Assembly: GCF_037042905.1 (NCBI RefSeq)
Contig: NC_087251.1
Span: 19,034,001-19,098,000 of the forward strand
Origin: Lytechinus pictus
Taxonomy: Eukaryota
Reading direction: 5' to 3'
DNA: 64,000 nt
Both the position numbers and the translations under genes were made by a program. The notes beneath the pieces were generated by a model that was not told the DNA's origin, did not search any database, and saw only the letters and a program-made list of their open reading frames with translations. This document shows positions 2,948 through 63,884 of the stretch, one piece after another. How positions within the stretch are numbered: position 1 is the stretch's first letter; each line of letters opens with the position of its first letter.

Positions 2948-5125
2948 GTATCGTCAAACCTGTACTCTCTGGTGGAGAATCGGAAACGGAAGGTCATTCC
3001 GCACCTCAGAAGACACCCTCTCGAGATTTATCCACAGAGAAGAAACACTTACCCAGCTCAAGGAGTCTGAGTAGTCCATTGCCATCGATCACGGTAATGG
3101 CCCCAGCGACCATTCATGAGGAAAGTGAAGCAACAGAATCTGCAATCAAAATACCAACCTCTGAAAGTCCTGGAATAGTCGTGCCTAAGGTCTCATTTAC
3201 GACAGAGTTAACTCCGACACCTCTGGCAGATGTTGATGTGAGAATCCTCGAAAGCAGGGATCCTGGTCGTAACAAAGACGGTGAGAAGGAACAGTCACCA
3301 TCACTTCCAAAGAAACGCATCGCATTGCCAATCATCTGCATTGAGAGTGAATCGGACAAAAGTGACAGCGACACTCCGGCTAACACAAGCGGAGAGAGTT
3401 CTCCTCCTGTAAACAAATCAAACGATCTCTTCGTTAAGTTCTCAGTGAGGCCAGCTTTTGAAAGGCCACCACCGAGTAGGAGAGTTTCAGCTGATTCAGC
3501 CAGTTCAGGGCCGGTGCGTCCATCGGGGGTGATACGGAAAGACAGCCTCGGTATACCATCGGTTGTGAAAGGGGAGATTGCTTACCCTGGCGTCCAACGG
3601 AAAATGCCGACACGAAGGCAGTCTGAACCATTGACAATTACAGTACAGCCACCTGCTATTTGTGAGACAAAACAAGAAAAGGACCAAACAATCTCACAGG
3701 AGGTTATTAGACCAATTCCGCAGAGGGCTGATAGTCTTGGAGTTCCCCAAGTCTTCACGGGTGAAGCATCTTTTCCAATGAAACAACCTCAGACTGGACC
3801 GCCAGGCAATATGCCACCTGCAACTGTCAACCCAAAGAAACCACCAGGTGCCAGGAGGAAAGAAAGCCTCGAGGTACCAACAATTGCAACTGATGAAGTG
3901 TCCTTTCCCCCAATGACAAAGACTGTAATGGGACCACCTCTGGAAAGACCAATCAAGCGCCATCGGCCACTTAGTTTGAATATTCCATCGCTTTCGGCCA
4001 CATCTCCAGAAGAATGCTCAGAAGACAGACCTCCGTTTTCTGCTCCAGCTGCCAAGAGAAAACATACATCTATCCTGAAACGTGGAAACAGTCATGAAAA
4101 ACCCGGTCCCAAAAAATCTGTTACATTCTCGCCGACAGTATCTCCACAGGAGATCCCACCTGAATTCAATTTCGATCGCGAATCTGATGGAGCTATTTAC
4201 ACTCTTCCAAAGCGACCCAAAATGTTCCGCCATTACAGCATTGACTCATCCGATATGTCTTTAAGACAAGAGAGATACCGCGCCGCTGGGAGACAAACCG
4301 CTCAATGTAGAGAAGCTGGTATCCTCTTTTCAGATGATCAACCAAATATCTCTGGTGTGAACAGGACTAGTAGTGATTTCGGCAGCCTTTCTGATTTTGA
4401 CATGAACATGTCTCCTTCAGTATCAGAAGGAAGCAAGGATGTTGACATGGAAACACATACATCGGACATGGAAGAAAGTGATGATGTTTTTGAGGATTCC
4501 AAAGCTCTCGAAATCAGCAATGCCAAGGCTCGATTCCTCGCCGCTGGTGGCGCTCGCGCTGTTATGTCCGTTTTATGCACACAAGACTCAAGTGATTCCA
4601 ATGGTCAAGGGTCAAAGTATTCCAGTGTTGACCTCCTTGAAGCAGAGGCCAAGACCGACTCATCACCGTCAGATGAATCGCCTCAATCAACTTCAGACAC
4701 GACGCCAACAACAGATACCCTTTTCAAGGAACCAGAGACCACTACGATCAAGATTGTTCCTGAAACCGAATCGACAAGAACAATCACTACGCTCTCCTCA
4801 CCTGATAAAGACAAATCTGATATTGGTCCTAAGCGTTTCATATCAAGCGAGGACCTTGACATACGTGCTTCACTTCTCTTCGTGGAGACCGTTCGGAGTT
4901 CTGTGGAATCTGATCTTTCGGAAGGGCGACACAGTCATTCATCTGAAGAAAGTGAGAATTCTGCGAGCGAAGACGTCGTCCGCCTTCCCGCAGCCGATTC
5001 CAATAGTGCCAAGAGTCGGTTCTTCCAGTCTTGTCAAGAGACCAACATCACGCCAAGGCACCATCGTCACCATGGAGAAGATACCTGGAACACTCCGACA
5101 ATACCAGAATTACCTGAACCATTGG
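2948..5125 (+). CDS. Actin-fold fusion gene: giant internal exon (726 codons), Ser/Pro/Glu-rich disordered region
   Basis: Lies within ORF 2875-5208. Pyrimidine-rich acceptor ...ttctaatccag|G at 2948 and donor G|gtgagt at 5125, phase 1 at both ends. GC content is well above the flanks. Confidence 0.85.
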
Positions 5126-6359
5126 GTGAGTACCATAATCTATACTCATATTTCACATATTTGTTAACTATAAAACTATTACGATCCTTAACAATACCGA
5201 CCCTTTGAAAACTATCACTTGTGTCAGGCCTGTTCTTGATTTAGCAAGGAAATAAACATGATAAAGGGATTACTAATTTCTGTTTTGCCTTATGCAAGGT
5301 GTGGCATGATCTTCATCGGAAAAAATGAGGATATCCAGCAATGATTGTTTGATTAAATGCATCTTCTCCTTTAAAAAAAAAGGGGGGGGGGGGTGTTAAA
5401 AATGCCGAGTAAGCTGGTGCTGATTTCTGGTGATGATCACGTTGATGAAGTACTGGTCATTATAAAAATGACAAAGATAACAATTATCATAGTTGTGATC
5501 ATAATAATGGTAATGATGGTGATTGGGATGATTCAAGAGGTATATGCAATCTCTTTTATATGGTAAAATGAATCCGGAAATGAATGATCAGGAGATAGAC
5601 AAATGAAATTCATGAAAATACATCCGAACACATGGGGGAAATACGTCTTTATTGAAAGAATATTCCAAAATGTTATACAGTTTTAATGTATAATTTATAT
5701 CATGAAATAACAAAGAATTTCAAAGCAACGATTTCCTAGAATACAAAATGATAAGCAACGAAGCAAATTTGACTTATAATATTTATTGAACGCTGTGAAA
5801 TAAATAAAATTGAATTGAGATACTAAGGATTTGACAAAAATAATTCCTCATTCATCCCGTGATGATAAACTTACAGTAGTGTTTAATCTCTATCATAATA
5901 CTGTATTGTTTTGCACAGGTTTTTAACTAAATAATGAAAGAACAAAGCGCCACGTTCGCTGTTAAACAAGTCAAAGTTTTTCACTATCATAATAACGAGA
6001 CAGGCCCACCTAATAGTGAACGTATTCATTAATTCCTTTTACACTGGTCGTTGTAATTGCAATGTACGTTAGATGCGATGGTAGGCGCGTGGCGTTTTTT
6101 CTTCTCTCTGTGCAAGGGAATTAAAGATAACGAGTGAAACAGATGACTTCCACGGGTACCGGATTTAGATTCCAGTAGCATCCAGAATAGCATCTTATTT
6201 ATTCCAGATGTTTATATTTAGCTGTCAAGGGCAGCACGATATACGAGTTGAATCCGGGGTTGTTCATCTTTGGACAGCGGGGAAACCATGACGACAAGAA
6301 TGCATGCAATGTGACAGAAGGATGTAGGGGGTAGGGGATGGGTCTGGGATGCCCTAGAT

Positions 6360-7588
6360 CAGGGATTCTCAAATGGTGGCGCGCGCGCCACTTGTGGCGC
6401 GCCGAGCCTTGCGGAGTGGCGCTTGGAAGCCGGTATAAAAAAGTAAAAATAAAGAAAAATACGGGAGATAAAAATGTATCTACCAGTAACCTGGAAATAA
6501 GGATTTGGTGATCATTTTAATACAAAGAGAAAACAAAAACTCTTTACTTGACACTTAATTGATTTCCTCAAATTTTGTCCAATTTAGCACTCGATAACCT
6601 CTATTATAGAGGATCGATGTTGTTCTTTTTATTTATTCTATGCGGTACAAAGTTTATGTGCCACACAAGTGATTTGAAAACCCCGTTTGTAGGATTTCTA
6701 TTTCAACGGCGAGAAATGTTGCATTTCCAGAGTATCCTTTTTGTTTAAGAGTTAAACATCAAATAATGTGATATCCATAGAGCATCCTGATCATTAAAAA
6801 ATATGAATTTGGGGCATAACAAGCAGAAAATTTGTTTCCGGAGCCGATTAAAATCCGAAGGTGTAAAGTGAAATACATACATGCTCAGATGTATTGCCTG
6901 CCGTGATTGCCTGCATGCACTCTTGCTTAACACGAACTGAATAAATGATACTGCACGTGAGTTGTAGAGGGGCAGTTTGGGCGCTAGTGCAGTGCAACGC
7001 CTAATTTTCAGCCCTTGCAAAATCGGGGAACGTAACTTTAGCCACTGGCGTACAGATGGGGGCGGGGATTGGGGGCCCCCAAGTGTTTCACGGCCAAGAA
7101 AACAAAAGGAGAAAAGAGGAGAAAAGGAAAGAAAAGGGAAATATTGTATTATCTTAATATTATGTCAAAATATAGATTTTTGTATTGAAAAGTTCAATAT
7201 TTTTGCTTCAGCTGCCATATCTAGCCCCTCATTTTTTTTTACTCATTACGCCACTTGCTTCAGCCAATAGATCTGGTGCAGAACAGTCTGAACTAGTGGT
7301 ATCATTGGTATGTTGTGAAAAAGTCACTGGTCATTTTTCTTTTAATATTGTGTAGTTTGTTGGCATTTGTATTTCTTCTTTTGATATTAATTAGAGCCCC
7401 TCTGGGCAATTTAAAAGGCCTCATATTCCAAAACTTCTTGGGGCTCTGCCCCCTCGACCCCCACGCCACCAGGGGCCTCTGGGCCCCCCATCCGCTGATA
7501 CATTGCTGGTTTGCGTAATGGATAGTGGAGCATTACAGATTCTCAACAAGAAATGTGGCGCTTCCAAAAAAGTAATTGAGAATGGCTG
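6360..7588. mobile_element. Non-autonomous hAT-type DNA transposon
   Basis: TIRs cagggattctcaa / ttgagaatggctg and a perfect 8-bp TSD CCCTAGAT (6352-6359, 7589-7596). Confidence 0.8.
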
Positions 7589-7759
7589 CCCTAGATTATA
7601 CGTCATCTATACCAACACTCACTCCAAACTCCCGAGCCCTAATCCCATGGGTTGATGGAAGGAGAGGGGTAGCCAATGCTGGTGTAATTATTATACGATA
7701 ACTTAAATTAAGCGCAGTTCAATAATAAACACATAGTAGAAATGTGTGTACCGTTTTTA

Positions 7760-7980
7760 TTATGATAATTACAATATTTTAATTATTATCATTATTATTG
7801 TTATAATCAATTTCATTACTTTTATTATTATTGTTATAATTAATTTTATTATTATTATTATTATTATCATTGTTGCTATCACTACTACTACACTATTACT
7901 AATTCTACTTCTATTATCACCACGATCACCATGATCATCACTATCATTATCACAATCATTATTTATTATTATTATTATAA
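7760..7980. repeat. Degenerate (ATT/ATC)n microsatellite
   Basis: Direct reading. Confidence 0.85.
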
Positions 7981-10025
7981 GGGGGCAGAATGCTTTATTT
8001 GTAACGAAAAGATTTTCCAATCTCTATTTTAGATTTAGCTTTCGTAGTTGCGATGCCATTAATCTTCAATATTAATCCATTTGACACTCCATGTCTCTGA
8101 ATGTTTTACAGCAGATATGGCACCACTCCAATGCTTTGATCATCTATGATGATCATCTTTCTCCACTTGATTATACAGGCTCACCATGCATAACTTTTTC
8201 ATAGATCATTAAGTTACAAAATGACAAGTTCAAACAAATGTCGCGACCCTTTCCTTGACACAATCCTACTCCCCTGGTCCGCCGTTCTCCCTTGCTCATC
8301 AAGAGAAATATGCATGGAATTAAGCAAATGCACCCGGGTTTTTCTCTTAGCACGTTTTACGGCTTTACAGTCCAAGCGAGAGTGAAAGTTCTGATGAGGG
8401 AAAAAGCCGAGGGAATTCTTCTCGTCATCAAAACGACTGCATTTATCACGTGTTGCAGAGCTTTGCTCCTCGTGGTGTATTCGTCATGTTCGTACTAGCA
8501 ACATGAATAGTAATTTTAGAACGAGGATATTCAGATTAAGCCAAGTCTGACACACACATCAAACATTGTTATGATCATGATTAGTAGTATTATGGTGATG
8601 GTGATGATGATAATGATAAGTATAGAANNNNNNNNNNNNNNNNNNNNNNNNNNNNNNNNNNNNNNNNNNNNNNNNNNNNNNNNNNNNNNNNNNNNNNNNN
8701 NNNNNNNNNNNNNNNNNNNNNNNNNNNNNNNNNNNNNNNNNNNNNNNNNNNNNNNNNNNNNNNNNNNNNNNNNNNNNNNNNNNNNNNNNNNNNNNNNNNN
8801 NNNNNNNNNNNNNNNNNNNNNNNNNNNNNNNNNNNNNNNNNNNNNNNNNNNNNNNTAGTAGTAGTTAAGTTATCATGACCCTAAAACATTGTTCCTTATG
8901 TTATGGGATCATTGACATTAGATTGGGTGGATCGAAATGGGCTATCCGAAATATTTAATGAGTTAGGAAATATTGCACGAATCAAGACTGAGTACTAATT
9001 AAAAGATTCACATTCACTAGTTCTACATCTACTGAAGATTCGTAACTCTTAGAGGCTTACTACGAAATATCGAGTAATCGCGTCGGATAAGGAAATCGCG
9101 TAACCTGACCTTTTCGTGAAAAATTTAAATCAATGTCCGAAAGTTCAGGTTTATTGGATTGTGGTACTTGTTAAACTGATGGTTTTGCTTAAACATTTTT
9201 AAACAAGTTGTTGAACAAGTATGTTCAGGGTATCAGCGGGTTATTTGGACCTGAACATTCATAGATTAAAGGCGAATATTTCCCAAATAGCAGAACCTTC
9301 CTTTCCAAAATTAGAGGGGGTATGAAACTTCCTTGCGATGGTTTGCAGTAAGCAATATCTAGATATTAATTTTTCAAAAAATTATGTTGATATATTCTAT
9401 ATATTATGTGACAACAGAAAATAAAAACTATTAATAAATTCTTGTGAAATCTCTTCAACTCTGTGATTTTGCAAAGAGGTGGTGAGATTATCTCGAATAC
9501 ACAATGAACAAAATATAAATCGCATTGTTAAAGAAATGATTGGTTGACTGTTCAAGATAAATGAGAACAATCCAAAAGAATGCGAGATAATGTACATGTA
9601 CACTCATAAGTTATATCAGATTTGGATGATACGACTAAAAGAAAAAAAAAATCGTGTCAACATCCGATCAATTGGACATCATCTTTTTAAACATTGGCTA
9701 AGATTTTCATTTATTTAGCCATGCTATTCATTTGGGTATCACAATTTTGTACATTAAGATTGATCCTTTTAAACTATCATATTATACAGATATATGTTTT
9801 ATTTTCAAGAAACAAAATCATGTATCTTGATTTTTTACAATGACGTCGAGATCGAAACGGCCATTACGAGAACCAAATAGTCCAAACTAGATTGACATCG
9901 TTATCAATTATTGGCTCAGATTTTAACATTATGTAATTCTGTTCAACTCTTAACCAACCATGCATTTCAATATAAATAGACAAGATAATTTCATTAAGAC
10001 ATACAACGTTTTCTTTTCTTTCTAG

Positions 10026-10115
10026 AACTTGATTCGCAGGATGAAGAATCAACTTCAGCTGCTCGTGATGCTGATATCGACGACTCAACATCGACATCGA
10101 GTTCACCATCGTATA
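10026..10115 (+). CDS. Actin-fold fusion gene exon (ELDSQDEESTSAARDADIDDSTSTSSSPSY)
   Basis: ttttctttctag acceptor, gtaagt donor, 90 nt, phase 1-1, open in frame with both neighbours. Confidence 0.8.
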
Positions 10116-10399
10116 GTAAGTGCAGCATAATGACATATCTCATTTCAATTTAATTATCTTTATTTGTTTTGTCACTTTCGTCTTCCTTTTTGTCTTGTTT
10201 CTTCCTGATTTTTTAAAATCTTCTATAATTATATATTTTAAAGAGATACAAGGCGACATTAAACGTAACATTAAGTGCGAAAATTTAGGAGGTGAGACAG
10301 AAAATCTTTTTAAAGTAAAGTTATTGACTACTGTTAATTATTTAACAGATGTTCAATTCTCAAATCTTTATATCCTCAATAATTTCCATCTTCTTACAG

Positions 10400-10819
10400 G
10401 CAGTAGTTGGTATGGTTTTCTAGAGCTTGACCCTTCGCGACCGTCTCTCGCCAACCTTGATGTGGAGATCATCGAAAGCACCGACAACGACCTTTCAGCT
10501 CCTCTTCGAGCGGATGACGACACGGGTGACGAGGTCGAGGATGACTGCGGGAGACGAGAAAATCAAGAAAGTGTCACGTTAACTGGGGCAGAGGATGGTG
10601 GGAGGTCTAGAAGAGGAGAGGGGGAAGAAGGGACAGCGGTGGTAGGAAGGACGGAGGATAAAGATGATGAGGCGAAGGACGCGTGCCCAGAGAGGGCTCC
10701 TATTGCCTCGGTGGGGGTTCCTCTTACCGAAGCAGGGGCACCAGCAGAGGAATCCAGAAGTGTCGGGTCCAGTAAGGACGATGCCTTGCGTCATCAATGG
10801 CCACTAGCCGTTTCATCAG
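10400..10819 (+). CDS. Actin-fold fusion gene exon, acidic low-complexity (SSWYGFLELDPSRP...WPLAVSS)
   Basis: ttcttacag acceptor, gtatgt donor, 420 nt, phase 1-1, within ORF 10120-10863. Confidence 0.8.
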
Positions 10820-12145
10820 GTATGTCAGTGACGTCACTGCTTTCCAGGAAAGTCGTGACATGATACATAGACTGGAAGCAATCGAATATATTGAACTTTG
10901 GAATGCGAATTCACAACAATGTGCGTCCCGATATACTAAAGGTCAGACCTTATGGGTATTGATGGCGGAGTTAATAAATTGTATTTTTATTTTAGTGTAG
11001 ACGGATGGTGATTGGTTTGTAATGGGGGAGGGCTGACTATGAGAGATGGGTTATAGAAAGATGATGAAATTTATGAACAAAATGAGCAGAAATTTAGCTT
11101 AGAATACCTAGACGACTCCAGTTCCAAAATTATACTCAAATATACGGTAGAATTTCAAAACATACCCCTCCCAGAGTCACAAAATAGAGAAAATAGTGGT
11201 GTGCAGCTAGGAAGAAGAGGGTCAAGTGCATTTTACTTTGGTAACTTGCCCAGTGGCGGACCGTGACCCGGAGGAGACGATGATTGGAGGGGCACTGTAT
11301 TGTTGGTGAAAAATGCTGTGCCCCTCCAAAGTTTTGTCTCCTCCTGGTCACGGTCCGCCACGTTAACTGCCCCTTTTGTCGCGCAGCCCCCTATGCCGGT
11401 AAATTTCCCACTTCACGGCGTCACAGTCCACGTCACCGCAGCTAGGGTCAAATAGTTTCCGTACAAATATATTTATAGCACGATATATATATATACATAT
11501 TGCATCTTGATAAAGGTCATTATTTCCGCCAAGTAATCTTGAGACCTGAATAGATAACGAAAGAAGTGGGCGGGTGTCATGGTCACACTCTTGGATATCT
11601 CTTTTCCGACCCAATGAAATAGAGATATGTCACCTTTGGAGCTTTCGAACAAAAGACGGTTGTTACGAGATGAGAAATATATGCGTTGTGGTTTAGTGGA
11701 TGGATCATGAATAACAAGGTATGGGTTTAAACTCTTTCTTTGTCTCACCGATGTCTCGGCCTCTGAGACATAAGACATTTCCATTTGAGACACACTATCA
11801 CTGCCTTGAGACATATCTCAGGGTATAGACTACAATCTTTCTTCTTTTACCTTATATTCAAACTTTATTAGCCCGGGGTTGTTCGTATACTTTTGCTTCA
11901 GAAAGAAAACAATATTCCCAATGGATAGTCATTAGAGTATGCTAGAGACATCAACAAAGTTTTTGGTGATTTTGTCATTTTTCATGTGCCAACTTTGTTT
12001 GAAAAAAAAAAAAACTTTGAATCATAATGGAAAGGTGAACATTCGCCCCTTCTTAACTTCTGATTTTTTTTTCTTGATGCGGAGGTTTGTGAATCATAAT
12101 TGTATTAAATCTAATCCAGTTATTTGGTTTTAACATTATGCCTAG

Positions 12146-12385
12146 CTTCGTCGCCTGGTCAATCTCGACATCGTCGTCACTTTAATACCCCAATCATCAT
12201 CGATAACGGAACATCGATGGTCAGAGCGGGACTCGCTGATGGCGTGGCGCCCTCTGTCACCATCCCGACAGTGGTTGGCCGACTGAAGAAGGACCTTGAA
12301 AGCTTCCGACATCGTAAAGACCTTTACGTGGGTAATGAACTCACCAAAAAGTACGGACTGGTCTGTGTAAGCAACCCCATGAAAG
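12146..12385 (+). CDS. Actin-like domain exon 1 (PIIIDNGTSMVRAG...PTVVGR...DLYVG)
   Basis: Matches actin phosphate-1 loop DNGSGMCKAG and PSIVGR/YVGD motifs. cctag acceptor, gtaggg donor, phase 1-1. No in-frame Met upstream of the actin fold in this exon. Confidence 0.9.
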
Positions 12386-12662
12386 GTAGGGCCATTATAG
12401 TCGTACGTAGGATGATATATAAGATTGCACATATATGCAGCTTTAAAATTGTGATCCAATGGAAATTATAATTCTCTTTCCATTTGAATTCCATTCTGCC
12501 ATCAGTTACGTAACCAAATAATACTTATGTTTTCAATCGGAATTACTGTTGCAAACCAGATTGGAAATCTATGAAGTTAAAATGCGAAAGTTATTTCGAA
12601 ACTTTTATTAATTTACAGTAGGCGTCGTTTTGTGCACCTTGTATGGTAACTTTTGTCCTGTC

Positions 12663-12821
12663 ATGGGATTTTGATTTATACATTGACATTTATATTAGTT
12701 TTGATGTATCACACAATTCGGCAGAGGACATGATGAAATATGATGGAATTTTGATTTATACATTGACATTTATATTTGTTTTGATGTATCACACAATTCG
12801 GCAGAGGACATGATGAAATAT
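12663..12821 (+). repeat. Two-copy 80-bp tandem duplication in an intron
   Basis: atgg(g/a)attttgatttatacattgac...ggacatgatgaaatat at 12663 and 12743. Confidence 0.9.
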
Positions 12822-13062
12822 TAAGCAGACCAACGTAAACCTCAAATTTCCTTATACTTTAGAAATGTTGATAACATAATATTGTAATAATCAGATATTC
12901 GTTTTCTATTCAACAACTATGCATTCAATAGCCGGTTGATGTGGGTAAAAAAAATATATTATTACACACATTATTTCTTAAAATTTTCTTGTGCTTTTTC
13001 GTAACCTACATTCCACAAAGATTAATCATTTTGAATAACCTTTTATTTTGTGCCCCAAATAG

Positions 13063-13208
13063 GAGGGTTAATCGATAACTGGTCCGAGTTGGAATATATC
13101 TGGGACCACGTGATCAAGAAGGAGCTAAATGTCACGTGGGAAGATCATCCAATTCTGCTGACAGAGGTGGCATCGGCACCAAAACGACAGAGGGAAAGGG
13201 TTCTTGAG
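13063..13208 (+). CDS. Actin-like domain exon 2 (GLIDNWSELEYIWDH...HPILLTE)
   Basis: Matches actin GIITNWDDMEKIWHH / EHPVLLTE; phase 1-0. Confidence 0.9.
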
Positions 13209-13615
13209 GTATACATCAAAGACTTAGCAGAAACTTTTGTTTATTCGCTATGAATAATTACGAATGCCTTAAAATTCACCTTGATAACCATTGAATTATC
13301 TACCAAATAATTATTTTGAAGGTTAATTCATAGCATATAATTAATAGTTCTTGTGTTAATGAGACCAACGTCGGTAGATTTTCATACAGATGATAAAATT
13401 TGCAATAAACATTTATTATAGATATATTGGTACGTTGAAAAGAAGTAGATCAATATTGATGTTAATGATGGTCCAAGATGAATCTTAATTCTTAACTACT
13501 ATCATTGATGAACACTGCATACTAATGACTCATAAACTCTGTAAGAGTCAGAAATAATTAAATTCTCTCATTCGCCATCTCTAAATCTTACTTGTTCATG
13601 ATTTCATACCACCAG

Positions 13616-13783
13616 GTGTTATTTGAGACGTACAAGACTCCAGCTTGCTTTGTGGCTAACCAAGGTGCTTTAGCCCTACATGCCAATGGTGAAACCTCTG
13701 GACTGGTCTTGAGCAGTGGTAGCGGGGTAACGGAGATCGTACCGGTATACCAGGGGTGCACCATGTCTCATGCAGTTACCACG
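13616..13783 (+). CDS. Actin-like domain exon 3 (VLFETYKTPACFVANQGAL...SSGSGVTEIVPVYQG)
   Basis: Matches actin MFETFNTPAMYVAIQAVL / DSGDGVTHTVPIYEG; phase 0-0. Confidence 0.9.
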
Positions 13784-14500
13784 GTAAGCATGGGTTTTAC
13801 CATGGGGAGGTGGAGGGTGATCTCTTGGGGTTTATGACTATTGCAACTTTACGATACAGAACGGGAAGTCACGACGGCGACCAATCGAGCATGCACACCA
13901 CATCTTATAAACGCAATGTTAAATATGAAGTTTTCCATCTTCGCAACATTCACATGGTTCCATCACATATTTTGTCTGTAATGTAATAAAACGTTTGAGA
14001 AAGTAACATTACTGCATGTGCAGAATGGATTTCCATTGTTACCCACAATTCTTCGAGATGCAGCCAAGACAGTTCTATCCCGGAGACAAGTCTGGTAAAG
14101 TCCCTTTGTTCCAGCGATGAGAACAGCTCACTGTTTCGCAAAGTTCGTATCTACAATGTATAACTGGCCCATTTTAAGACTCCCACGGTAATATCTTTTA
14201 CATCTAAATCTGGAACAGCAGTATTCAATTTAATGGCACATCTTGCTGTACTTTTATCCGACGCATATTGCTCGAATTCAGTCAGAACAGCTGACAATAC
14301 AACATGTCGATGATATCCCAAATAGTTCGTCACTAACTGATACTTTTTAATGTCTTCATTGTGATGTCGAGAAAGCATTTGATTATATTTAATTATTCTT
14401 AAGGTCATCACATTCATGAAAAATAATCCTCAAAAATCTTGTTTTTAATCATCGATAATGTGGTAGCACTGGATTTATCTCCTTCATCTCATACATGCAG

Positions 14501-14636
14501 ATGCCAGCAGCGGGCCGAGGGGTCACCAGAAGGCTTCAGCGAATCTTGATGGATGAAAGAGCTTTCTCTGTTTCTACGCCGTTTGACCACCGCATTCTAC
14601 AAGAAATGAAAGAAAACATGGCGTATGTCTGCAAAG
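14501..14636 (+). CDS. Actin-like domain exon 4 (MPAAGRGVTRRLQRIL...MKENMAYV)
   Basis: Matches actin LAGRDLTDYLMKIL / IKEKLCYV; phase 0-1. Confidence 0.9.
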
Positions 14637-15103
14637 GTAAGAATGCTTCTTTAATCAAGTTGTATTCATCGTCGGACTGTAGATCTCGTGGAAATGAATT
14701 TTAGACTTCACCAAATTCACATGGTCTTTTCATTCTCCACATAGGTGTTCAATTGGGCTTCTGCTATAGGATTGAAATCTTTACTCAGTGTAATGACCGC
14801 CATGGCACCTGGCGGATTTAAGGAGCAAATTTTAAGCGTTGCAAAGATTCTCTCTTCAGCTTTAGCACGCCCTGGCAATGGAAGTGTGATATGATTAGAC
14901 GTAATATGAACATCAACACCACCTCGAATTATTTTACATTTTTACATAATAGACAATCTTTATTCTTGGTTACCCACGAAATTTTACCACTTCATTGAGT
15001 CACCATTTGTCATATCTACGGACATTGAATATCTAAATTTGTGAATGCAGATTTATACCTGATAAACCTTTTTATCTTTCCGCTGTTTCTTGAATCTGGT
15101 CAG

Positions 15104-15287
15104 ATTATGAGAGTGAGATGTCACATTCAGATTTGACTACACCAATCAAATACTCTCTACCTGATGGCTCATCAGTCATGCTCCGGAAGCGAGATCTCTT
15201 CCATTGTTCGGAAACCATCTTTAGACCTGACATAGTTGGACTACCTCAGAAGGGACTGGTTCAAGTCCTCAGTGACTGCCTTGAAAA
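15104..15287 (+). CDS. Actin-like domain exon 5 (DYESEM...KYSLPDG...CSETIFRP)
   Basis: Translated by hand; matches actin DFEQEM / YELPDG / CPEALFQP; phase 1-2. Confidence 0.9.
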
Positions 15288-16019
15288 GTAAGCAATTTTC
15301 GGGGCTGAAGTAGCAGTGTATTTGACGGCACTGCCATTATTACGCCTATTTGTATAGATAGAAAACCAGAAGAGGAATGATAATTTCGTGTCAAATAAAA
15401 ATATTTCATGATTCTTTGATAATATTGTCATTCTGAGTAAAAAAGTTGATTAGTCGGAATAACAATGACCCGACTTTTGCTATTACTTTGATTACTGCTG
15501 ATCCTTTTCCTCGCTCGATAAGGCAATATAGAGACAGTTTTTAACTTGGTCAGTCTTACTCGGCAAAGTAATGTGGGTCAATCGTTCGGAGGCCAGAAAC
15601 AAATATCTGAGTCTGACATATACGAAAAAAGGTCATCAAAGTTCCCGGGACGGCTGCCAAGAGTGCCCTCTCGTTGTCCTCTAAGGCAAGGTCCATTGGA
15701 TCTGTCACTGGTGTGTAGCAACCAGAGCGATGTCGATCGAGTCAGAATAACGCTAATCTTGACAGATGATTATGTACAAAATATTTAAGATGAGAACAAG
15801 AGTGTCATCGATCGCAACTCTCAAAATAAATATAACCAGATTACCTTGGCGAGCTTGACCAACCAAGCCAAACTTGATTTGCATATAACTTCGATAGATT
15901 TGAAAGAATGGCAGCAAAGGGAGGGGAGTGTTAAGGTTATTCATTATGTATTTTATTATTTCTTTAATTGACATTATATGAGATTCTGATCTTACATTAA
16001 TCCCTTATCTGTCGATCAG

Positions 16020-16287
16020 GTGCAACCCAGAGTTCCTTGCTGGTCTGGATCCTACAATCCTGTTAGCCGGTGGTAATACCAAACTCCGTGGATTTACCGA
16101 ACGACTCCAACACGAACTAGACAAAGGTGACTTCAACCGGACCGCCATTGCCCCCGACAACCGCGACATCACCACCTGGATCGGTGGTGCCATCTTGGCC
16201 TCGCACTCGAGCTTCGCTGACAGGCTGATCACTAGTGAAGACTTCGAAGAGTTCGGGACCAGTTTAGTCCACAAACAGACTATCTGA
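16020..16287 (+). CDS. Actin-like domain terminal exon (ILLAGGNTKLRGFTERLQHEL...WIGGAILAS...VHKQTI*)
   Basis: Matches actin LSGGTTMYPGIADRMQKEI / WIGGSILAS; TGA ends at 16287. Confidence 0.9.
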
Positions 16288-31107: not shown

Positions 31108-31855
31108 GATTTAATCACACAAAAAGTGCACTTTAAATTCCCAGACACATTTTCAGACAATTGAAAAAATGGATATAAGTTAAACCACTTCTACTGGACA
31201 GCCATCCAGCATCAGGAAGGGGGGGGGGTGCTCCTGGACGACATGAGAATACACTACTGAGCCCATCCCCACTGATTTTTGTTGGTGATTACCTTTGCTT
31301 CCCCTAAATCTTCTAAACAAAACAGAAGTTTTCTGGGGACCTCTTAAATGAAGCCAAACTGCACCGATTTTAACCATGATTTAGATTTAGTATTAAGTGT
31401 TCCCTGCTGCTTAACACTATTTTTTATATAAATTCAGTCAGATGAAATAAAATATGCATCAAATTTCTATCATGAAAACCTACATAACCTACATAAAACC
31501 TACATAGAAAAATAGAAAATGATGCATACGTTTTGCCATTTAAAGTTGCAATTTATCAAGTTGCAAGATATAGACTTCCACTAACACTTGCTTATGCAAC
31601 ATTTTGGTGACTTGGAAAGGGTATTGTATTTTTGAATATAGGTTCTTCTTTTATGCCAAAATGAGCAATTGGGTAAACATGAATATGAAAATGGAAACAA
31701 TTTTCATGCATTCACATAAACCATGATAACACCTTTGGTCATCTTTCTTTTGAAGTTCCCAACTGGAGAATGCTTTTTTTATTAAGTTAGTGATGATCAG
31801 TATTGACAACACACCTTTGTGAATATAGGGTATTGCCTTCATGTTTTATACTTAC

Positions 31856-32008
31856 AACTGATGTATCATTAGGAAGATTATCTATTGGACCAAAGTCAGA
31901 CCACCTCTCTCTAATAGTCTGAACCATCTCATCTTTGGTGAAGAGTTTCTTGTCATTCCATCGATTACCATCAAATGGCATGTACTCTATAAAACGGATG
32001 TCTAATGC
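31856..32008 (-). CDS. MOCS1: MOCS1A exon (IRFIEYMPFDGN)
   Basis: MoaA motif; phases 0-0. Confidence 0.95.
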
Positions 32009-33406
32009 CTGCATATAAGAAGGTGAAAGAAAGAGGGGAATGGAGAAAGGGAGGGATGGAGGAAAGGAAGGGATGAAGGGAGAACAGGATGAAAGGAAAG
32101 ACAGATTACAAAAGAACAGTGTTTAGAGAGAAGGGAAGAAATAAAGAGAGGAATTACACTATTTAAATGTAGAAATTCAAATGTTGCCTAAATTACATGT
32201 AGAAAGCACAGTCTAAACAGAGAATTCCATTTTCCATGTAAGAAAGAATACTCTTCTATTAAAGATAAAAAGACATCTGACAAAACATTCTGGTGAGCCC
32301 AACAAGCAAGTTTGAATTAATTTCTATAGGTATTGAAAAGTAAGTAATAAATGACATAATTGCACATTTACATACATGTAGCAAAATCATTAAGATTGTC
32401 AACAGTCGGTCAACTTGTTAATGATGTTATATATAGAAGCATTTCACACAGTTGTTGAAGAGTATGTATTAAACATTGTTCAACATTGAGGTTCTGTGCA
32501 TGGGACAGCACAGCAAGACACAAGTTTTATTATGAATTCAGCCATGTACCAGTTAAGATGAGGCCTTATTGTCATGTAAGAAATTAATAAGGAAATGAAC
32601 AAATGCTTCTAACCCACTAATGATGCTTTCCTGTAACAACACACATGTGTGTATCTTTAATGGGTCATTTTAAAAGTTCATAAAATATTAGAAAATAATT
32701 ATATGATATTGACTGGCCTTCTTCTTCTTCTTCTGGAAACAGTACAGTCCACCGTCTGGTGTATTGTCGTACTTGAGGGAACATCAAATATATTGCCCAC
32801 AAAAGAATCATATTGGCCAGAGTCGTATTGGCCAGAGTCGAGGGAAATATGGTTCTTTTAAGGGCAATATATTTTGTGTTCCCCGAAAGAAAAGCCAGTC
32901 AATATTTTTATTATCATCCAAATCATATATCTAAAGCAAAATCATGAAAATTTAGATATTTCTTTCAAGAATATGTTTCTACTGTGTCATGTTTATATCA
33001 GGGGACAGGCTCTGCACTTTACCATTATGATGTACTTGTAATTACGGTATAAGAGTGCGTCCCTAGGGACGCATATCCAGTGCCCAGTGCTGTCTTTATT
33101 ATGACGTATATTGTTGCTGTGGGAATCATTATGAAGCGTATCTCTTTCTACGCATCCTCAAATGCCCGAATGTGAGACCAGAGAAAATACAAAGGTATAT
33201 TTTGCATCGTCAATAGGCGCATAGGGACCAAGCAAAATACAAACAATGTACCTATCCATTCCTGATATTCAGAAAATCTTGGTCAATACGGTTTTGTAAA
33301 TTACTAGCTCAGATGTCTGATCCGGGTAATAATGTTACAATGCAGGCCTATTATTTTCAATTTGTACATGTACATGTACACAGTAGGCTATATACGTATG
33401 ATTTAA

Positions 33407-34016
33407 AGGACAAGTCCACCCCAACAAAAAGTTGCTTTTAATAAAAAGAGAAAAATCAAACAGGTACAACACTGAAAATTTCATCAAAATCGGATGTAAA
33501 ATAAGAAAGTTATTACACTTTAAAGTTTCGCTTTTTTTCACAATACAGTTACATGCACATCCTGATCGGTATGCAAATGAGGAGACTGATGGATAATCTG
33601 CTCACTATTTCTTTTGTATTTTATTTATATGAAATATTCTAATTTTCTCCTCATTGTCAAGTGAAACAACAATTAATTCCTCCCTGAACATGTGGAATAA
33701 GCATTGTTTAATACTTCCGGTATATGGTTCAGTCAAGTTGGTCCTTATTGTCAAATCTGCAAAAAAAATGAATATTGTATAATTTAAACAATAAAAAACA
33801 AAAGAAATAGTGAGTGAGGGACATCATCCTCTGTCTCAGTTGCATGTCACTGAGTTGTGCATATTGACTGTTTTGTAAAAAATAAGCAAAATTTTAAAAT
33901 GTCATAACTTTCTTATTTTACATCCAAGTTTGATGAAATTTTCAGTGTTACTGTTATGCTAGTTTGATTTTTCTCTATTTATGCAAATCAACATTTTTCT
34001 AGGGTGGACTTGACCT
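33407..34016. mobile_element. Foldback MITE, TTAA TSD with AGG...CCT ends (Kolobok-like)
   Basis: TTAA|aggacaagtccaccc ... gggtggacttgacct|TTAA with long mirrored arms. Confidence 0.8.
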
Positions 34017-37000
34017 TTAACAGGCTACATGTACACGTACAAGTAGTAAGATTTATTTGAGAACATATAAAATTCAGTACCAGTATTTTAGAAATTCTAA
34101 AATTCCATGTTTTATTGAAGGTTAAATCCATGGTTGCCAAACTGACAATTAACTCATAACAGATGACTGCTAAAACATTCAGTACTCAAATGAAATTATA
34201 TATATATGTTGGCTAAGAAAAAAAACCAAGAGCTTTGGGTGCTCATATCCATTTGTAAACACTGATATTGACAGTGTGAATTGGACATTATATATTTAGA
34301 ACCAGGGAAGTGGGAGGTTACCGCACATACTACCTTTGACCCATTTGCGTTACATATGATAATAAAGTTCTAAGGACTACAATGTACCTTTATGTCGAGT
34401 TTTGCCAATCATTAATTATTTGAATTTAATTTTTACAAGATTTACTATTCAAAGCACGTTATCAACATCTTGAGCTTTCCTTTACAATTTGATATGGGAA
34501 ATATCATGCAATAAAATTACAAGCCTGAAATAATCATGCGTCGAACACGAAGACACAAATGCACTATAAAATGTGCACACATGTGAGATCGGTCACAACA
34601 CTGATCTCTTTCATAATATCAGAGACAGTCCCTAATTCCCGATAGTGGATCTCTGCTCAAGGAAGAGCACTCACTCCAATCATGTGAAACTTCCTATGTT
34701 TACATACACTATACCAAGTAGAATGACAGAAGACTGCCCTAGATGGCCTAAGATAGACCTGTCCACACTATTCAAATCCACTGTATACAATGTAGCATTG
34801 AGCCATCATCATAAATGCATCATGGCATTAAAAAAAAATATGGCTAGATAGAATCTATGTGCTGCTTAAATGCATGATGTGTGAAACACCCTCTTTAAAA
34901 ATGACTAAACTTTTCTTCTTTATTCACTATTCACACAAAGTAAAAATTACAATTATGAACCATGCAACATATGATAAAATTCATTACTTAATGCAGCCTA
35001 TCAAACTATGAGTCTATTTCCTTAAAGGTAAAATTAATTGCAATTGTAAATTTATGTACATATGCCTATCACAAGATCCTTAATTTGAATGGCTATTGCT
35101 ACATGTAGAATAAATTAGGCTATTGTAGGCAAAAATCATAAATTTACAAACGATTTGAGAATTTTGCTGAATATCACGAAAGTTGGTACATAGGCCTACA
35201 CGTCGAATTGCTGGGGTGAAGGGCATTTAGTATAAAAATGTATGATACCTATGTGCTGCGGTTGAGACCCCCATTTTCATCCTAAATTTCTGTTCCTGAG
35301 CATCACCAATAAAGAAAGCCATAGAGATTCCTATTTTTTCCCATTCCGGAGACCCTTAAATCTGTTATTTCTTGTTCCAATTTTTTAATAATGCGCGCCT
35401 ATCATGGACTCCTCAGCTACTTAGCAATCATTGATCCAAGAGCTGTTCCGGAGACCCCCGCTTTAAGACAAAAAATTTAGTTCCATAGCCCCCGCCCCCG
35501 ACTTAGGCACGGCACATAGGTATCATGTTATAACTTGAGTACCTCCCCCCACCCCCTGGGGACAAATTATCACTAAACTTTTTTCAAAATTATGTACACC
35601 ACACAGCATATATCGGTATACTAATTTTTCTAGTGTGAAAAGGGTATGATAGTTGAAGGAGTGTTGTGTGCAGACGCCCTCCCAGGGGTTCTAACTCATT
35701 GGAATGCTAGAGGTCACATTGCACTGTACAAATGAGACCTTTAGCATGGCCTAGTACAAATGTAGGCTATCCTGGCAAGATGCAGTATGTAGTGCTATGG
35801 CTATGATATAATATGTGCATGTAGCCTGCAGCAATCCATGCATTATTGCAAGATAAGGAGATTATAATTTGGGGTGACATGAATTATTGTATGCGCATAT
35901 TCATCATCCTTTAAAGTTTCGACAGCTTCTCATTCAAATACATAGGACCTACATAGGGCCTATACATATATTTGTAAGTTGATCAATGCCATTTAAAAAT
36001 CACAAGTATTTCATTTTTCAATTCTGCAAAATAAAGTAGGATCTTGATTTGACATTGTAAATTCATTCCGTTTCGACATCAATACACCTTAGCTTTATAT
36101 TAAATGTCAATAGAATTTAAATGCAAGCAACCATTTGCAGAAGTCATACATGTACACTCACATGTGAATTTAATAATTTTACAAAAAAGACCTTTATATT
36201 TTGCTTTCATTCATTTTCATTTATAAAATTGGGTAGTAACCCACCCTGCCCCCCCCCCCCAAAAAAAAAAAAGTTGGGGAGAGGAAGAGGGATTTCATAT
36301 GTCTGGGAAAAGTACAAATGCATGCATGAAAGAACAGTTTACAAATTTACATGTTTTTATCTGACAAAGAAGGCAGAACAGTGCTCTCTGTATCTCTTTG
36401 CATTCATTGTACAAATTTATAAGGAGAAAAGTTAATTCCCCATGAAAAGATAACAATAATGAAACTTTTTTTTCTCAGTCAGCAAAATTTCAGAGCATAT
36501 TTACGACCATCAATGCACACTATTTTTTTATTTTTTTACATGGACTTGAGGCAGTGTGATGTTTCTCACAAAGGCAAACACATAAACAAGTTTTCATTGT
36601 TTACCAAGACTGCATGTCAAGGGAAGGAAACTCTTTATTTGCTCAGAAGATATATAGAACATTTAACTAATATGAGAACAAAATAAATAACTGCTAACAT
36701 AGATATCATTACCTTGAACCCGTAACAGAAATATAAAACCAAGTATATGAACTAGAAAACATTAATTAAATTCAAAAGCCTTTTCAATGATCCATCATTA
36801 TAAAGTCTATCACAAAGTCTACCTCAAAACTGACTTTTGATCCCTATAATTCTACAATAATCAATGTTGCTTTTAACCAATAAATCAAAAGAGTCACAAA
36901 GCACACATAATGACTTCTCAATTCATCAGAAAATTATTCAATTTAAAGGTTCTCCTGATGGCAATTTGAGGATAACGATTCCAAAGTGGATTTCATATTC

Positions 37001-38515
37001 TACAATTTAGCAGTCAGGAAGTACATTAGGTTACATCCAAATGTAGATAAAGAAACCAGCCTATGGGAATGAAATGCAAGCATCACATCCAATGTTATAC
37101 ATTAACCATTTTCTATGCATGCACAAAATATACAGTTGAGTCTATCGTTATTGGAAAAGGGAAGCAATCTTGATATTGTAGTAAAAGGTCAGGGGTTTGG
37201 AAAAACACACCAAAATAAATTGGCTAAAATCCAGTCTAAATCTTTAAAAAGGCTTAAACAATATTAGGACTTTATATAATATAGAAAGTCTTAATATTGT
37301 TCAAGCTTTTTTAAAGATTCATGCATTTTCTGTGTGTAGCTTGCTTTATCGGTGTACATATTATGTACACTGATAAAGCAAGCTACACACAGAAAATGCA
37401 TGAATTAAAGAATAACATATTAACATTAAGGCTCAAAAGCAGTTCTGAAAATCTTTCTAGAACTACTTTAATCTCTTTCTTTAATATACGGCATATTTCA
37501 GCTACCCAATCATTCAAAATGAGCTAAATTTGAGTCTAAGATAAAACAAATAGTCTATTCAAAATAGAAAAATCTTATAAAGGAACAATAAAATAATAAC
37601 TCTTGGTAAACTTTGGCATACATGTATAAAGTAACCCATCAGGAATTGTTTCATGATTACATAAATGTAAGAGAACTTCAGCTGACTGGAGCTTTAATAC
37701 CCTTGACATTGAACCATAGCAGGTGTGGCTGTCAGACAGAGGCCAGCTCTAAGAGTGTATGAACATAGTCTGTGACATGACCTACTTGCAATGAACCTAA
37801 TGGTATCCTTGAAATGTTGTGAATGGCCTCTGACAATGACATTGAAAATATATAGTCTGTAACAAAAACTGTTTCTTCATCAGCTAAAGTTTCCACATTT
37901 TCAAGAAATTGACACCAATGGCCCTCCTACAGAAAGCTTGATAATACAAGACACACTGTTTCAATAAGCCTGAGTGGGGCAATTCTTGCCTGGAATAATG
38001 TGGCATTTAGCTATTACACTTTGTGATTCATGTTCAAGAAATTTGGAATGGTTTGGTATCATAAATCATCCTGCACCAAAACCTAAGTGTGTTTTTACCT
38101 GAAAATGAGCTGGCTTTGCCAAATAGTGTGCTATTTTGCCAAAAATAAAAGATTTTAATAACTTCAAGATGGAACCTATAAAACAACACTCTAATCAATT
38201 TTCATTTCAGGTAAATTTCAAGTTTGTTCTCATGGGGATAGCTGCATAAAAGTTACTATTATAGTAACTTTTACCATCCAATGGTAACCTTCATTGAATC
38301 ATTGATTTTGATTGGCAGATGAGCCCTGTTACCAGGGTAAATTACTATTGAATAGCAAAGTAACCGTAATGGTAACTTTGCTATTCAATCAATGGTAATA
38401 AATTGCAACAGGGCCCTGATCGCAAATAACACAATTTGACATACATTAGCTGATTTATATAGGCCTAGTGACAATAGAGTGGACAAGGTAGATACGACCT
38501 AATGGCACTGCTTAC

Positions 38516-38649
38516 CTTTTCCTCGGTGAGAGCAACAAAGTCACATAGTTCATCTTCATTGAGTCCTCTCATCACAACACAGTTGACCTTGACTGGGTCG
38601 TATCCATGCTCTAAGGCAGCCTCTATTCCTCTCATCACATGATGCCATC
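38516..38649 (-). CDS. MOCS1: MOCS1A exon ([15 protein letters not shown])
   Basis: MoaA motif; phases 1-0. Confidence 0.95.
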
Positions 38650-38711
38650 CTAAGAATAACCAAAAGCATATCATCTATAACCTTTTCTAATAATCAATAA
38701 CATTCACAGCC

Positions 38712-38910
38712 GGGCAATTCCATAAAATAATCAACCTTTTTGTACGTCCGACCCCCATTTTCTCAAGATTTACTTCACTTCATAAACTGACCAAGTCATG
38801 GTCATTTGAGAGCATTACAGACTGTCTAAAGAACAAGAAATCAGAGACAGAAAATTTCATGAAGGTCCCACATATAGGGGGTCGGACATACATATTTTAT
38901 GGAATTGCCC
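38712..38910. mobile_element. ~200-bp MITE with 4-bp TSD
   Basis: AGCC|gggcaattccataaaata ... tattttatggaattgccc|AGCC. Confidence 0.75.
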
Positions 38911-40319: not shown

Positions 40320-40484
40320 CTTTTCTCCTTGATATAAATTCAAACTTCTGTGGTACTAAGGTATCTATGCTAATATTGATCAGATCTAAACCAGCTTTCT
40401 TGAGATGTGGTAGTCGTTTGGCTAAGGTGACTCCATTAGTTGTCATGGCAATTTGTTTAAGACCCTTCAACTCCCTCAGGCCCT
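40320..40484 (-). CDS. MOCS1: MOCS1A exon (MTTNG...INISIDTL)
   Basis: MoaA motifs; phases 1-1. Confidence 0.95.
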
Positions 40485-41674: not shown

Positions 41675-41745
41675 CAAGGGATTGCATGTTAACAAATTAT
41701 ACAACTGTCATTCAATAATCATACTCAACCCAATATAGAACTTAC

Positions 41746-63870: not shown

Positions 63871-63884
63871 CTGTTCAATTTATA

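What the first reader, a model, noticed from the sequence alone, without database searches (positions are those of the whole stretch)
4069..4128. Paired SILK + RVxF PP1-docking motifs in the actin-fusion protein
Seen: KRKHT-SILK-RGNSHEKPGP-KKSVTF-SP. Known: SILK lying N-terminal to a [KR]xVxF motif in a disordered region is the typical signature of protein phosphatase 1 interactors. G-actin is a cofactor of PPP1R15-PP1 and a regulator of Phactr-PP1. Inference: this may be a PP1 regulatory subunit carrying its own actin-like module in cis, an architecture I do not recognise as described.
Basis: partly seen in the sequence, partly recalled or inferred. Interest (0 to 1): 0.8.

Follow-up and report, generated by a model that had tools for sequence, protein, structure and literature searches.

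The report
Conserved PP1-docking cassette in membrane-anchored actin-like protein
A sea-urchin gene encodes a protein with a likely membrane anchor, a long disordered region and an actin-like end, and its disordered region carries a SILK and RVxF motif pair unchanged across echinoderm classes, so it is probably a new, untested regulatory subunit of protein phosphatase 1.

Summary
Window 4069-4128 (+) encodes SILK, an 11-residue linker and KSVTF, inside a 2178-nt coding exon.

The gene has ten exons and encodes 1597 aa: an N-terminal hydrophobic, TM-like segment (exon 1, 16.6 kb upstream of the window), about 1150 aa of disorder, and a C-terminal actin-like fold. My model differs at 9 residues from nr 'mucin-5AC-like [Lytechinus pictus]'. 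A spliced RNA contig confirms every junction from the second disordered exon into the actin exons.

Nine sequences were compared: sea urchins, starfish, a brittle-star-like sequence and one further divergent lineage.
- SILK and KKSV[T/S]FSP are invariant in all nine.
- The linker is 11 aa in 8 of 9.
- Identity in this block is 72%, against 21% for the disordered region overall.
- AlphaFold2 scores the block as disordered.

The only PDB sequence resembling it is weak (E 0.25): an engineered PP1-specific peptide with the same 11-residue spacing, crystallised with both motifs in their PP1 pockets.

PP1 docking is therefore well supported but not demonstrated; the complex prediction gave no verdict. 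The idea that the actin-like fold acts like G-actin in PPP1R15 or Phactr holoenzymes is untested, and its cleft residues are substituted. No paper describing this architecture was found.

The parts
2948..5125 (+). Large coding exon (second exon of the gene), 726 aa of disordered, S/P/E/K-rich sequence that carries the motif pair
   Evidence: AG/GT borders and an open frame. Collinear tblastn match to Diadema P0003 aa 360-1037. Single copy in the genome. Pfam finds nothing.
4054..4065 (+). Basic cluster KRKH just upstream of SILK
   Evidence: Conserved in 8 of 9 sequences.
4069..4080 (+). SILK motif (S-I-L-K)
   Evidence: Invariant in all nine sequences. Fits the G/S-I/V-L-K definition in PMC9813921.
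4081..4113 (+). 11-residue linker (RGNSHEKPGPK) with a conserved Ser and an E/D-K/R-P-G core
   Evidence: Length is 11 aa in 8 of 9 sequences and 12 in one, while the residues vary. The spacing equals that of the PP1-bound engineered peptide 8SW5_C, whose linker comes from CSRNP1.
4114..4128 (+). RVxF motif (K-S-V-T-F), preceded by a further conserved Lys
   Evidence: K-K-S-V-[T/S]-F is invariant. It is the only strict RVxF match in the protein.
4129..4146 (+). S-P-x-V-[S/P/I]-P directly after the RVxF. The first S-P is invariant and the second is present in 7 of 9 sequences. These are possible proline-directed phosphosites.
   Evidence: S31, P32, V34 and P36 are invariant in alignment A5. The regulatory role is inference only.
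3532..3987 (+). Four copies of the repeat basic-x-x-S-L-x-[V/I]-P, three of them followed by G/D-E-x-[S/A]-[F/Y]-P. These are candidate phosphosites in the same disordered region.
   Evidence: The regex finds 4 copies here and 1-4 in every relative checked. The copies align across classes.
4525..4599 (+). Most conserved island of the disordered region (KARFLAAGGARAVMSVLCTQDSSDS), predicted as a helix-turn-helix
   Evidence: 84% identity between sea urchins and starfish. Helices at pLDDT 60-75 in the Diadema model.
10026..10115 (+). Small acidic exon (30 codons)
   Evidence: 90% identical to Diadema aa 1037-1057. Its 3' end is the loose end of RNA contig X1 that joins to position 10400.
10400..10819 (+). 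Acidic disordered exon that links the disordered region to the actin exons
   Evidence: The X1 RNA contig covers it without mismatch and joins it to 12146.
12146..12385 (+). Actin-like fold, exon 1 of 6
   Evidence: Pfam Actin E 3e-9. Junctions confirmed.
13063..13208 (+). Actin-like fold, exon 2 of 6
   Evidence: Pfam Actin E 2e-11. Junctions confirmed.
13616..13783 (+). Actin-like fold, exon 3 of 6
   Evidence: Pfam Actin E 6e-14. Junctions confirmed.
14501..14636 (+). Actin-like fold, exon 4 of 6
   Evidence: 80% identical to Diadema. Junctions confirmed.
15104..15287 (+). Actin-like fold, exon 5 of 6
   Evidence: Pfam Actin E 0.006. Junctions confirmed.
16020..16287 (+). Actin-like fold, exon 6 of 6, including the stop codon
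   Evidence: Pfam Actin E 3e-19. Junction confirmed.

Best explanation
The stretch is a bipartite PP1-docking cassette: SILK, an 11-residue linker, then RVxF. It sits in the intrinsically disordered middle of an echinoderm protein of about 1600 aa. That protein starts with a roughly 45-aa hydrophobic, TM-like segment and ends with a divergent actin-like fold. I infer that the two motifs occupy the SILK and RVxF pockets of one PP1 catalytic subunit at the same time. This would make the protein a PP1-targeting scaffold that holds the phosphatase at a membrane, next to its own repeated basic-x-x-Ser sites and its actin-like domain. The Ser and Thr inside and beside the motifs, including the invariant S-P right after the Phe, could switch binding off when phosphorylated, as in KNL1. 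Shown here: motif presence, gene structure, transcript, conservation, predicted disorder. Inferred: PP1 binding, membrane anchoring, cytosolic orientation, substrates, phospho-regulation.
For: The motifs are present and are the only SILK and strict RVxF matches in the protein. The ordered pair arose in 0.04% of shuffles. Nine sequences keep S-I-L-K and K-K-S-V-[T/S]-F-S-P invariant, and 8 of 9 keep an 11-aa linker whose residues vary. They are Lytechinus, a related urchin, Diadema, Patiria, Asterias, a starfish-like sequence, a brittle-star-like sequence and one further divergent lineage. Identity between sea urchins and starfish is 72% over the 25-mer, against 21% for the disordered region and 42% for the actin fold. 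AlphaFold2 gives pLDDT about 33 at the cassette, which fits a short linear motif in disorder. A profile of the cassette hit only one of 177,635 PDB sequences, the engineered PP1-specific peptide 8SW5_C, at a weak E of 0.25. That peptide aligns GILK...ERPG...KTVTW with the same 11-residue spacing. It binds PP1 at 4 nM, and its SILK and RVxF motifs are seen in their pockets in the crystal (PMC11536154). SILK plus RVxF is an established cooperative PP1 dock in KNL1 and Inhibitor-2 (PMC6715587; PMC9813921). PP1 genes exist in this genome. The gene is transcribed and spliced as modelled.
Against: No binding data exist. The complex prediction scored 0.91, but one unrelated control scored 0.73, so the tool returned no verdict. 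The PDB resemblance is not statistically significant on its own (E 0.25). No clear hydrophobic (PhiPhi) motif could be identified after the RVxF; PMC9813921 says this motif cannot be reliably read from sequence. If the hydrophobic N-terminus directed the rest of the protein into the secretory pathway, PP1 could not reach the cassette. Three RNA-seq runs of the species gave no reads, so expression is restricted.
Confidence: 0.72

Rival explanations
1. One reading: the actin-like fold is a built-in equivalent of the G-actin that completes PPP1R15-PP1 or regulates Phactr-PP1. On this view the protein is a self-contained three-part holoenzyme in which the actin fold shapes PP1's substrate choice.
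For: PP1 dock and actin fold sit in one polypeptide in every full-length orthologue. G-actin is a known cofactor of PPP1R15-PP1 (PMC4394352). A conserved helix-turn-helix island between the dock and the fold could be an intramolecular ligand.
Against: About 500 aa separate the RVxF from the fold. No RPEL or PPP1R15 PP1-binding domain is detected. Positions Y143, Y169, L349 and M355, which I recall as the cleft where actin-binding helices dock, are H, C, H and R throughout the family. No contact data are available.
Confidence: 0.15
2. The block is conserved for a reason other than PP1, for example a basic nuclear-localisation or lipid-binding patch, or a docking and phosphorylation site for a basophilic kinase.
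For: The block is rich in Lys and Arg (KRKH, KR, KK). It contains an invariant R/H-x-x-S site between the motifs.
Against: A basic patch would tolerate exchange of the hydrophobic anchors. Here I, L, V and F are invariant, while several basic and linker residues vary. A constant linker length with variable sequence fits a two-pocket ligand.
Confidence: 0.1
3. The protein is a secreted or lumenal mucin-like protein, as its database name suggests, so the motifs never meet PP1.
For: nr names it 'mucin-5AC-like'. It has an N-terminal hydrophobic segment and S/T/P-rich composition.
Against: Actin folds are cytosolic or nuclear proteins. The flank after the hydrophobic segment is basic, and in P0026 the flank before it is acidic, which by the positive-inside rule places the C-terminal part in the cytosol. 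The disordered region is full of conserved basic-x-x-Ser sites. The name most likely reflects low-complexity similarity only.
Confidence: 0.03

Closest known systems
CSRNP1-type SILK-linker-RVxF cassette, as used in the engineered PP1-specific peptide PhosTAP v1 (PDB 8SW5; PMC11536154)
   Same: G/S-I-L-K, then 11 residues containing E-R/K-P-G, then K-x-V-T-F/W. The spacing is identical. In the crystal both motifs occupy their PP1 pockets while the linker stays mobile.
   Different: PhosTAP is a designed chimera of Inhibitor-2, CSRNP1 and PNUTS parts. CSRNP proteins are nuclear factors with a Cys-rich domain. This protein gives no Pfam CSRNP_N match. This genome has its own separate CSRNP gene.
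KNL1 N-terminal PP1 dock (SILK + RVSF)
   Same: SILK lies N-terminal to a basic RVxF with Ser/Thr at the x position, inside a very long disordered scaffold. Binding there is switched off by phosphorylation of the motifs (PMC6715587).
   Different: KNL1's linker is about 30 aa, against 11 here. KNL1 is a kinetochore protein with MELT repeats and has no membrane anchor or actin fold. There is no sequence homology outside the motifs.
Inhibitor-2 (PPP1R2)
   Same: It uses SILK and RVxF-type motifs in a disordered chain.
   Different: Inhibitor-2 adds a long helix that blocks the active site. Nothing comparable was identified here, and Pfam gives no IPP-2 match.
PPP1R15A/B-PP1-G-actin and Phactr1-4-PP1
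   Same: These are PP1 regulatory subunits whose function is tied to actin (PMC4394352).
   Different: In those systems actin is a separate molecule, bound through a helix or RPEL repeats close to the PP1-binding core. Here the actin-like fold is covalently attached, lies about 500 aa away and has a remodelled cleft. No RPEL or PPP1R15 domain is present.
Conventional actin and orphan actin-like proteins
   Same: The fold is a full-length Pfam Actin match. Its best PDB matches are conventional actins at E 4e-83.
   Different: It is only 34-37% identical to conventional actins. Family-wide replacements affect nucleotide-site positions (G15, D154, D157, H161, T303, Y306, K336). It evolves fast, at 43-45% identity between sea urchins and starfish. 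It carries an N-terminal extension of about 1200 aa with a TM-like start.

Membership tests
RVxF/SILK-type PP1-interacting proteins | RVxF motif matching [HKR][ACHKMNQRSTV]V[CHKNQRST][FW] | tested here: met
   KSVTF at aa 711 of the full model is the only strict match in the protein.
RVxF/SILK-type PP1-interacting proteins | SILK motif (G/S-I/V-L-K/R) N-terminal to the RVxF | tested here: met
   SILK at aa 696 lies 11 residues upstream of KSVTF. The definition is from PMC9813921.
RVxF/SILK-type PP1-interacting proteins | Motifs lie in an intrinsically disordered, accessible region | tested here: met
   AlphaFold2 of the Diadema orthologue gives pLDDT about 33 and no secondary structure at the cassette. 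PMC8569552 shows that a SILK buried in a fold does not count.
RVxF/SILK-type PP1-interacting proteins | Anchor residues conserved in orthologues against a divergent background | tested here: met
   The anchors are invariant in 9 sequences. The block is 72% identical against 21% for the background.
RVxF/SILK-type PP1-interacting proteins | Physical, RVxF-dependent binding to the PP1 catalytic subunit | not testable with these tools
   Complex prediction returned no verdict. A pull-down or ITC is needed.
RVxF/SILK-type PP1-interacting proteins | Hydrophobic PhiPhi(xF) motif a few residues after the RVxF (present in most but not all regulators) | tested here: inconclusive
   A conserved Val at +4 and a hydrophobic residue at +9 (I, F, M or V) in 7 of 9 sequences are candidates. 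PMC9813921 states that this motif cannot be reliably called from sequence.
Actin family (Pfam PF00022) | Full-length match to the Actin profile above the gathering score | tested here: met
   Orthologues score 292-294 bits over profile positions 3-410. The window's exons match piecewise.
Actin family (Pfam PF00022) | Conventional-actin nucleotide-site residues (D11, G15, Q137, D154, D157, H161, T303, K336) | tested here: not met
   D11 and Q137 are kept. G15, D154, D157, H161, T303 and K336 are replaced throughout the family. It is an actin-like protein, not a conventional actin.
PPP1R15 (GADD34/CReP) | PPP1R15 PP1-binding core domain detectable by Pfam | tested here: not met
   Actin is the only Pfam family found on the full-length orthologues, and nothing is found on the cassette at E up to 10.
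Phactr | RPEL repeats and a C-terminal PP1-binding helix | tested here: not met
   No RPEL match appears in the Pfam scans.
CSRNP | CSRNP_N domain (PF16019) | tested here: not met
   There is no match on the cassette or on whole orthologues. The genome's true CSRNP gene lies on another contig.

The most novel reading that the evidence does not exclude
An echinoderm-specific, membrane-anchored PP1 holoenzyme whose regulatory subunit carries its own actin-like fold. The fold would act as an in-cis substrate-selection or regulatory module, a covalent counterpart of the PPP1R15-PP1-G-actin complex. The same disordered region might also recruit calcineurin through its PxIxIT-like and repeated LxVP-like motifs, which would make it a hub for two phosphatases.
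Probability: 0.15. Interest if true: 0.8.

Novelty: new variant of a known kind. Interest (0 to 1): 0.62.

Why it matters
PP1 gets its specificity from about 200 regulatory subunits, and actin is already a surprising cofactor of two of those families. This protein combines a textbook-quality PP1 dock, a fast-evolving actin fold with an altered nucleotide site and cleft, and a probable membrane anchor. That combination would be a new way of building a PP1 holoenzyme and a new use of the actin fold. It is directly testable in sea-urchin and starfish embryos, which are good cell-biology systems. It would also correct a misleading database name ('mucin-5AC-like').

Tried and rejected
- **Complex prediction.** I ran complex prediction on a metazoan PP1 catalytic subunit from a metatranscriptome (L009:13-996) with the 60-aa cassette (window:4015-4194). 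It scored 0.91 in three runs, but one unrelated 68-aa control scored 0.73. The tool's verdict is 'no answer', so I do not count it for or against binding.
- **Own PP1 gene.** No intronless PP1 gene exists in this genome, since the open frames are only 72-91 aa. I therefore took PP1 from a metagenome contig.
- **Pfam on the cassette.** A scan of the cassette from five species at E up to 10 gave nothing relevant.
- **PDB search.** phmmer with the single cassette found nothing. Only the profile found 8SW5_C.
- **ESM Atlas.** A search with the Patiria disordered region gave no usable hit.
- **Wider distribution.** The exhaustive profile search of 1.84 billion proteins found 9 hits. Those with source names are echinoderm, and the unnamed ones resemble echinoderm sequences. 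Long actin-containing proteins of fish and mammals lack both motifs and the hydrophobic N-terminus, so I rejected them as orthologues.
- **Raw RNA-seq.** Runs X22-X24 gave no reads on the exons, so I have no information on tissue or stage.
- **Native CSRNP cassette.** The CSRNP exon found here starts after the SILK part, so I could not compare the two cassettes directly.
- **Literature.** Searches for this architecture returned nothing.

Full report
**Observation.** SILK is at 4069-4080 and KSVTF at 4114-4128. These are the only SILK match and the only strict RVxF match in the protein. I shuffled the in-window protein 20,000 times. An ordered SILK followed within 110 aa by a strict RVxF appeared in 0.04% of shuffles, or 0.7% with the loose RVxF pattern. 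That is rare for one protein but not rare across a proteome, so the case rests on conservation.

**Gene structure.** The window is animal DNA with introns, at 36% GC.
- The motif exon runs 2948-5125.
- It is followed by a 90-nt exon (10026-10115) and a 420-nt acidic exon (10400-10819).
- Six exons then encode an actin fold: 12146-12385, 13063-13208, 13616-13783, 14501-14636, 15104-15287 and 16020-16287. All have GT-AG borders and compatible phases, and the exons hit Pfam Actin.
- The first exon lies outside the window, 16.6 kb upstream (L004:3395-4358). I found it by tblastn with the Diadema orthologue.

The assembled ORF is 1597 aa. It differs at only 9 residues, with identical length, from the nr entry 'mucin-5AC-like [Lytechinus pictus]' (P0025). 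The window is therefore from that species or a very close relative, and the gene is annotated but misnamed.

**Transcript evidence.** A contig of run X1 joins 10115 to 10400 and then every later exon at exactly the predicted sites, with no mismatches. The disordered exons and the actin exons are therefore one transcript, and X1 also holds 89% of the sampled words of the motif exon. Three raw RNA-seq runs of the same species showed no exon reads, so expression is restricted. In a further species, a 5171-nt contig carries the whole architecture as one uninterrupted 1457-aa ORF (P0026).

**Architecture.**
- Residues 1 to about 45 are strongly hydrophobic. This is the only stretch above the usual Kyte-Doolittle transmembrane threshold (mean hydropathy >1.6 over 19 aa) in every full-length orthologue. 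It is 59% identical between sea urchins and starfish. The flank after it is basic.
- About 1150 aa follow that Pfam cannot place. AlphaFold2 scores them below pLDDT 50, apart from one short helix-turn-helix.
- The C-terminal 370 aa are a confident actin fold (pLDDT about 90). Its best PDB matches are conventional actins at E 4e-83.
- The fold is only 34-37% identical to conventional actins. It is 67% identical between Lytechinus and Diadema and 43-45% between sea urchins and starfish.
- Family-wide replacements sit at positions I recall as nucleotide-site positions (G15, D154, D157, H161, T303, Y306, K336) and at cleft positions Y143, Y169, L349 and M355.

**Conservation of the cassette.** Searches found relatives that, where a source names them, are all echinoderm. 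They are Diadema antillarum and D. setosum, Patiria miniata, Asterias amurensis, a partial Amphiura filiformis model, and four unnamed sequences from read-archive and metagenome assemblies.

In all nine sequences that cover the region, S-I-L-K and K-K-S-V-[T/S]-F-S-P are invariant. The linker is 11 residues in eight of them and 12 in one, while most linker residues vary. Identity between sea urchins and starfish is 72% over the 25-mer. It is 21% for the disordered region as a whole and 42% for the actin fold. The cassette is the second most conserved island in the disordered region. Invariant hydrophobic anchors joined by a linker of fixed length but free sequence are what I would expect of a ligand that bridges two fixed pockets on one partner.

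**Link to PP1.** SILK (G/S-I/V-L-K) and RVxF are established PP1 docking motifs that act together in disordered regions (PMC9813921; PMC6715587). A SILK buried in a fold does not work (PMC8569552). Here the cassette is predicted to be disordered.

A profile of the cassette matched one of 177,635 PDB sequences: PhosTAP v1, an engineered PP1-specific peptide (8SW5_C). The match is weak (E 0.25). It aligns GILK...ERPG...KTVTW with SILK...E[KR]PG...KSVTF at the same 11-residue spacing. That peptide combines the Inhibitor-2 SILK, a CSRNP1 linker and the PNUTS RVxF. It binds PP1 at 4 nM, and its SILK and RVxF sit in their pockets in the crystal (PMC11536154). An 11-residue linker is therefore long enough for binding at both pockets at once. 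The E-value is not significant by itself, so I treat the match as a structural precedent and not as homology. PP1 genes are present in this genome.

**What is not shown.** The complex prediction of PP1 with the cassette gave no verdict because one control scored high. It counts neither way. No hydrophobic (PhiPhi) motif can be called with confidence. Membrane insertion and cytosolic orientation are inferred from hydropathy and the positive-inside rule only.

G-actin is indeed a cofactor of PPP1R15-PP1 (PMC4394352). Here, however, the actin-like fold is about 500 aa from the RVxF. No RPEL or PPP1R15 domain exists. The cleft positions that I recall as the binding site for such ligands in conventional actin are all substituted. 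The fusion is real and I found no description of it. A PPP1R15-like in-cis mechanism remains a minority possibility, which I put at about 0.15.

**Most likely function.** I read the protein as a membrane-tethered PP1-targeting scaffold (confidence 0.72 that the cassette binds PP1). Candidate substrates in cis are the two to four conserved repeats of basic-x-x-S-L-x-[V/I]-P upstream of the dock. The invariant Ser in the linker, the Ser/Thr within the RVxF and the invariant S-P after it are candidate off-switches, by analogy with KNL1. All of this is inference.

**Verdict.** This is a new, lineage-restricted PP1-interacting protein candidate with an undescribed architecture, which I class as a new variant of a known kind. 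The first-stage notes on the same gene agree with what I found: s1-317532 on the fusion and s1-317754 on the repeats.

Noticed in passing
L004:3395-3530 (window coordinates about -16605 to -16470, outside the window): The gene's first exon starts with a hydrophobic stretch of about 45 aa, possibly two helices split by S-T-Q. It is 59% identical between sea urchins and starfish and is the only segment of transmembrane strength in the protein. An actin-like protein with a membrane anchor is unusual.
   Followed up: partly
window 3532-3987: Four copies of basic-x-x-S-L-x-[V/I]-P, three of them followed by G/D-E-x-[S/A]-[F/Y]-P, with 1-4 copies in every relative checked. The S-L-x-V-P core resembles the calcineurin LxVP docking motif directly after a basophilic kinase site.
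   Followed up: partly
window 3328-3345: P-I-I-C-I-E fits the calcineurin PxIxIT pattern. Lineage variants (PAICVD, PSICVD in brittle-star-like sequences; PSIQVE in both starfish) also fit the pattern, while Diadema's PIICVV does not. Together with the LxVP-like repeats this hints at a second phosphatase dock.
   Followed up: partly
window 4525-4599: The most conserved island of the disordered region (84% between sea urchins and starfish) is predicted as a helix-turn-helix at pLDDT 60-75. Its function is unknown. It could be an intramolecular ligand of the actin-like fold.
   Followed up: partly
window 12146-16287 (actin-like exons): Family-wide replacements at positions I recall as the nucleotide site (G15, D154, D157, H161, T303, Y306, K336) suggest altered or lost ATP hydrolysis. 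The fold evolves far faster than conventional actin.
   Followed up: partly
window 2948-16287 and P0025: The public name 'mucin-5AC-like' for this gene is probably an artefact of low-complexity similarity. The only recognisable domain is Actin.
   Followed up: yes
window 11146-11344 (intron between 10819 and 12146): A short stretch inside the intron is covered at high depth in run X1, and by partial reads in the raw RNA runs that continue into unrelated sequence. This looks like a dispersed, expressed repeat.
   Followed up: no
window about 31790-41962, minus strand: Open frames at 31790-32122, 40252-40527 and 41711-41962 read like pieces of a radical-SAM molybdenum-cofactor synthesis enzyme (MoaA/MOCS1-like). 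This is presumably the neighbouring gene and was judged by eye only.
   Followed up: no
window 63660-63884, minus strand: An open frame containing LFIGGNDLC resembles a GDSL-type lipase or phospholipase B exon. This was judged by eye only.
   Followed up: no
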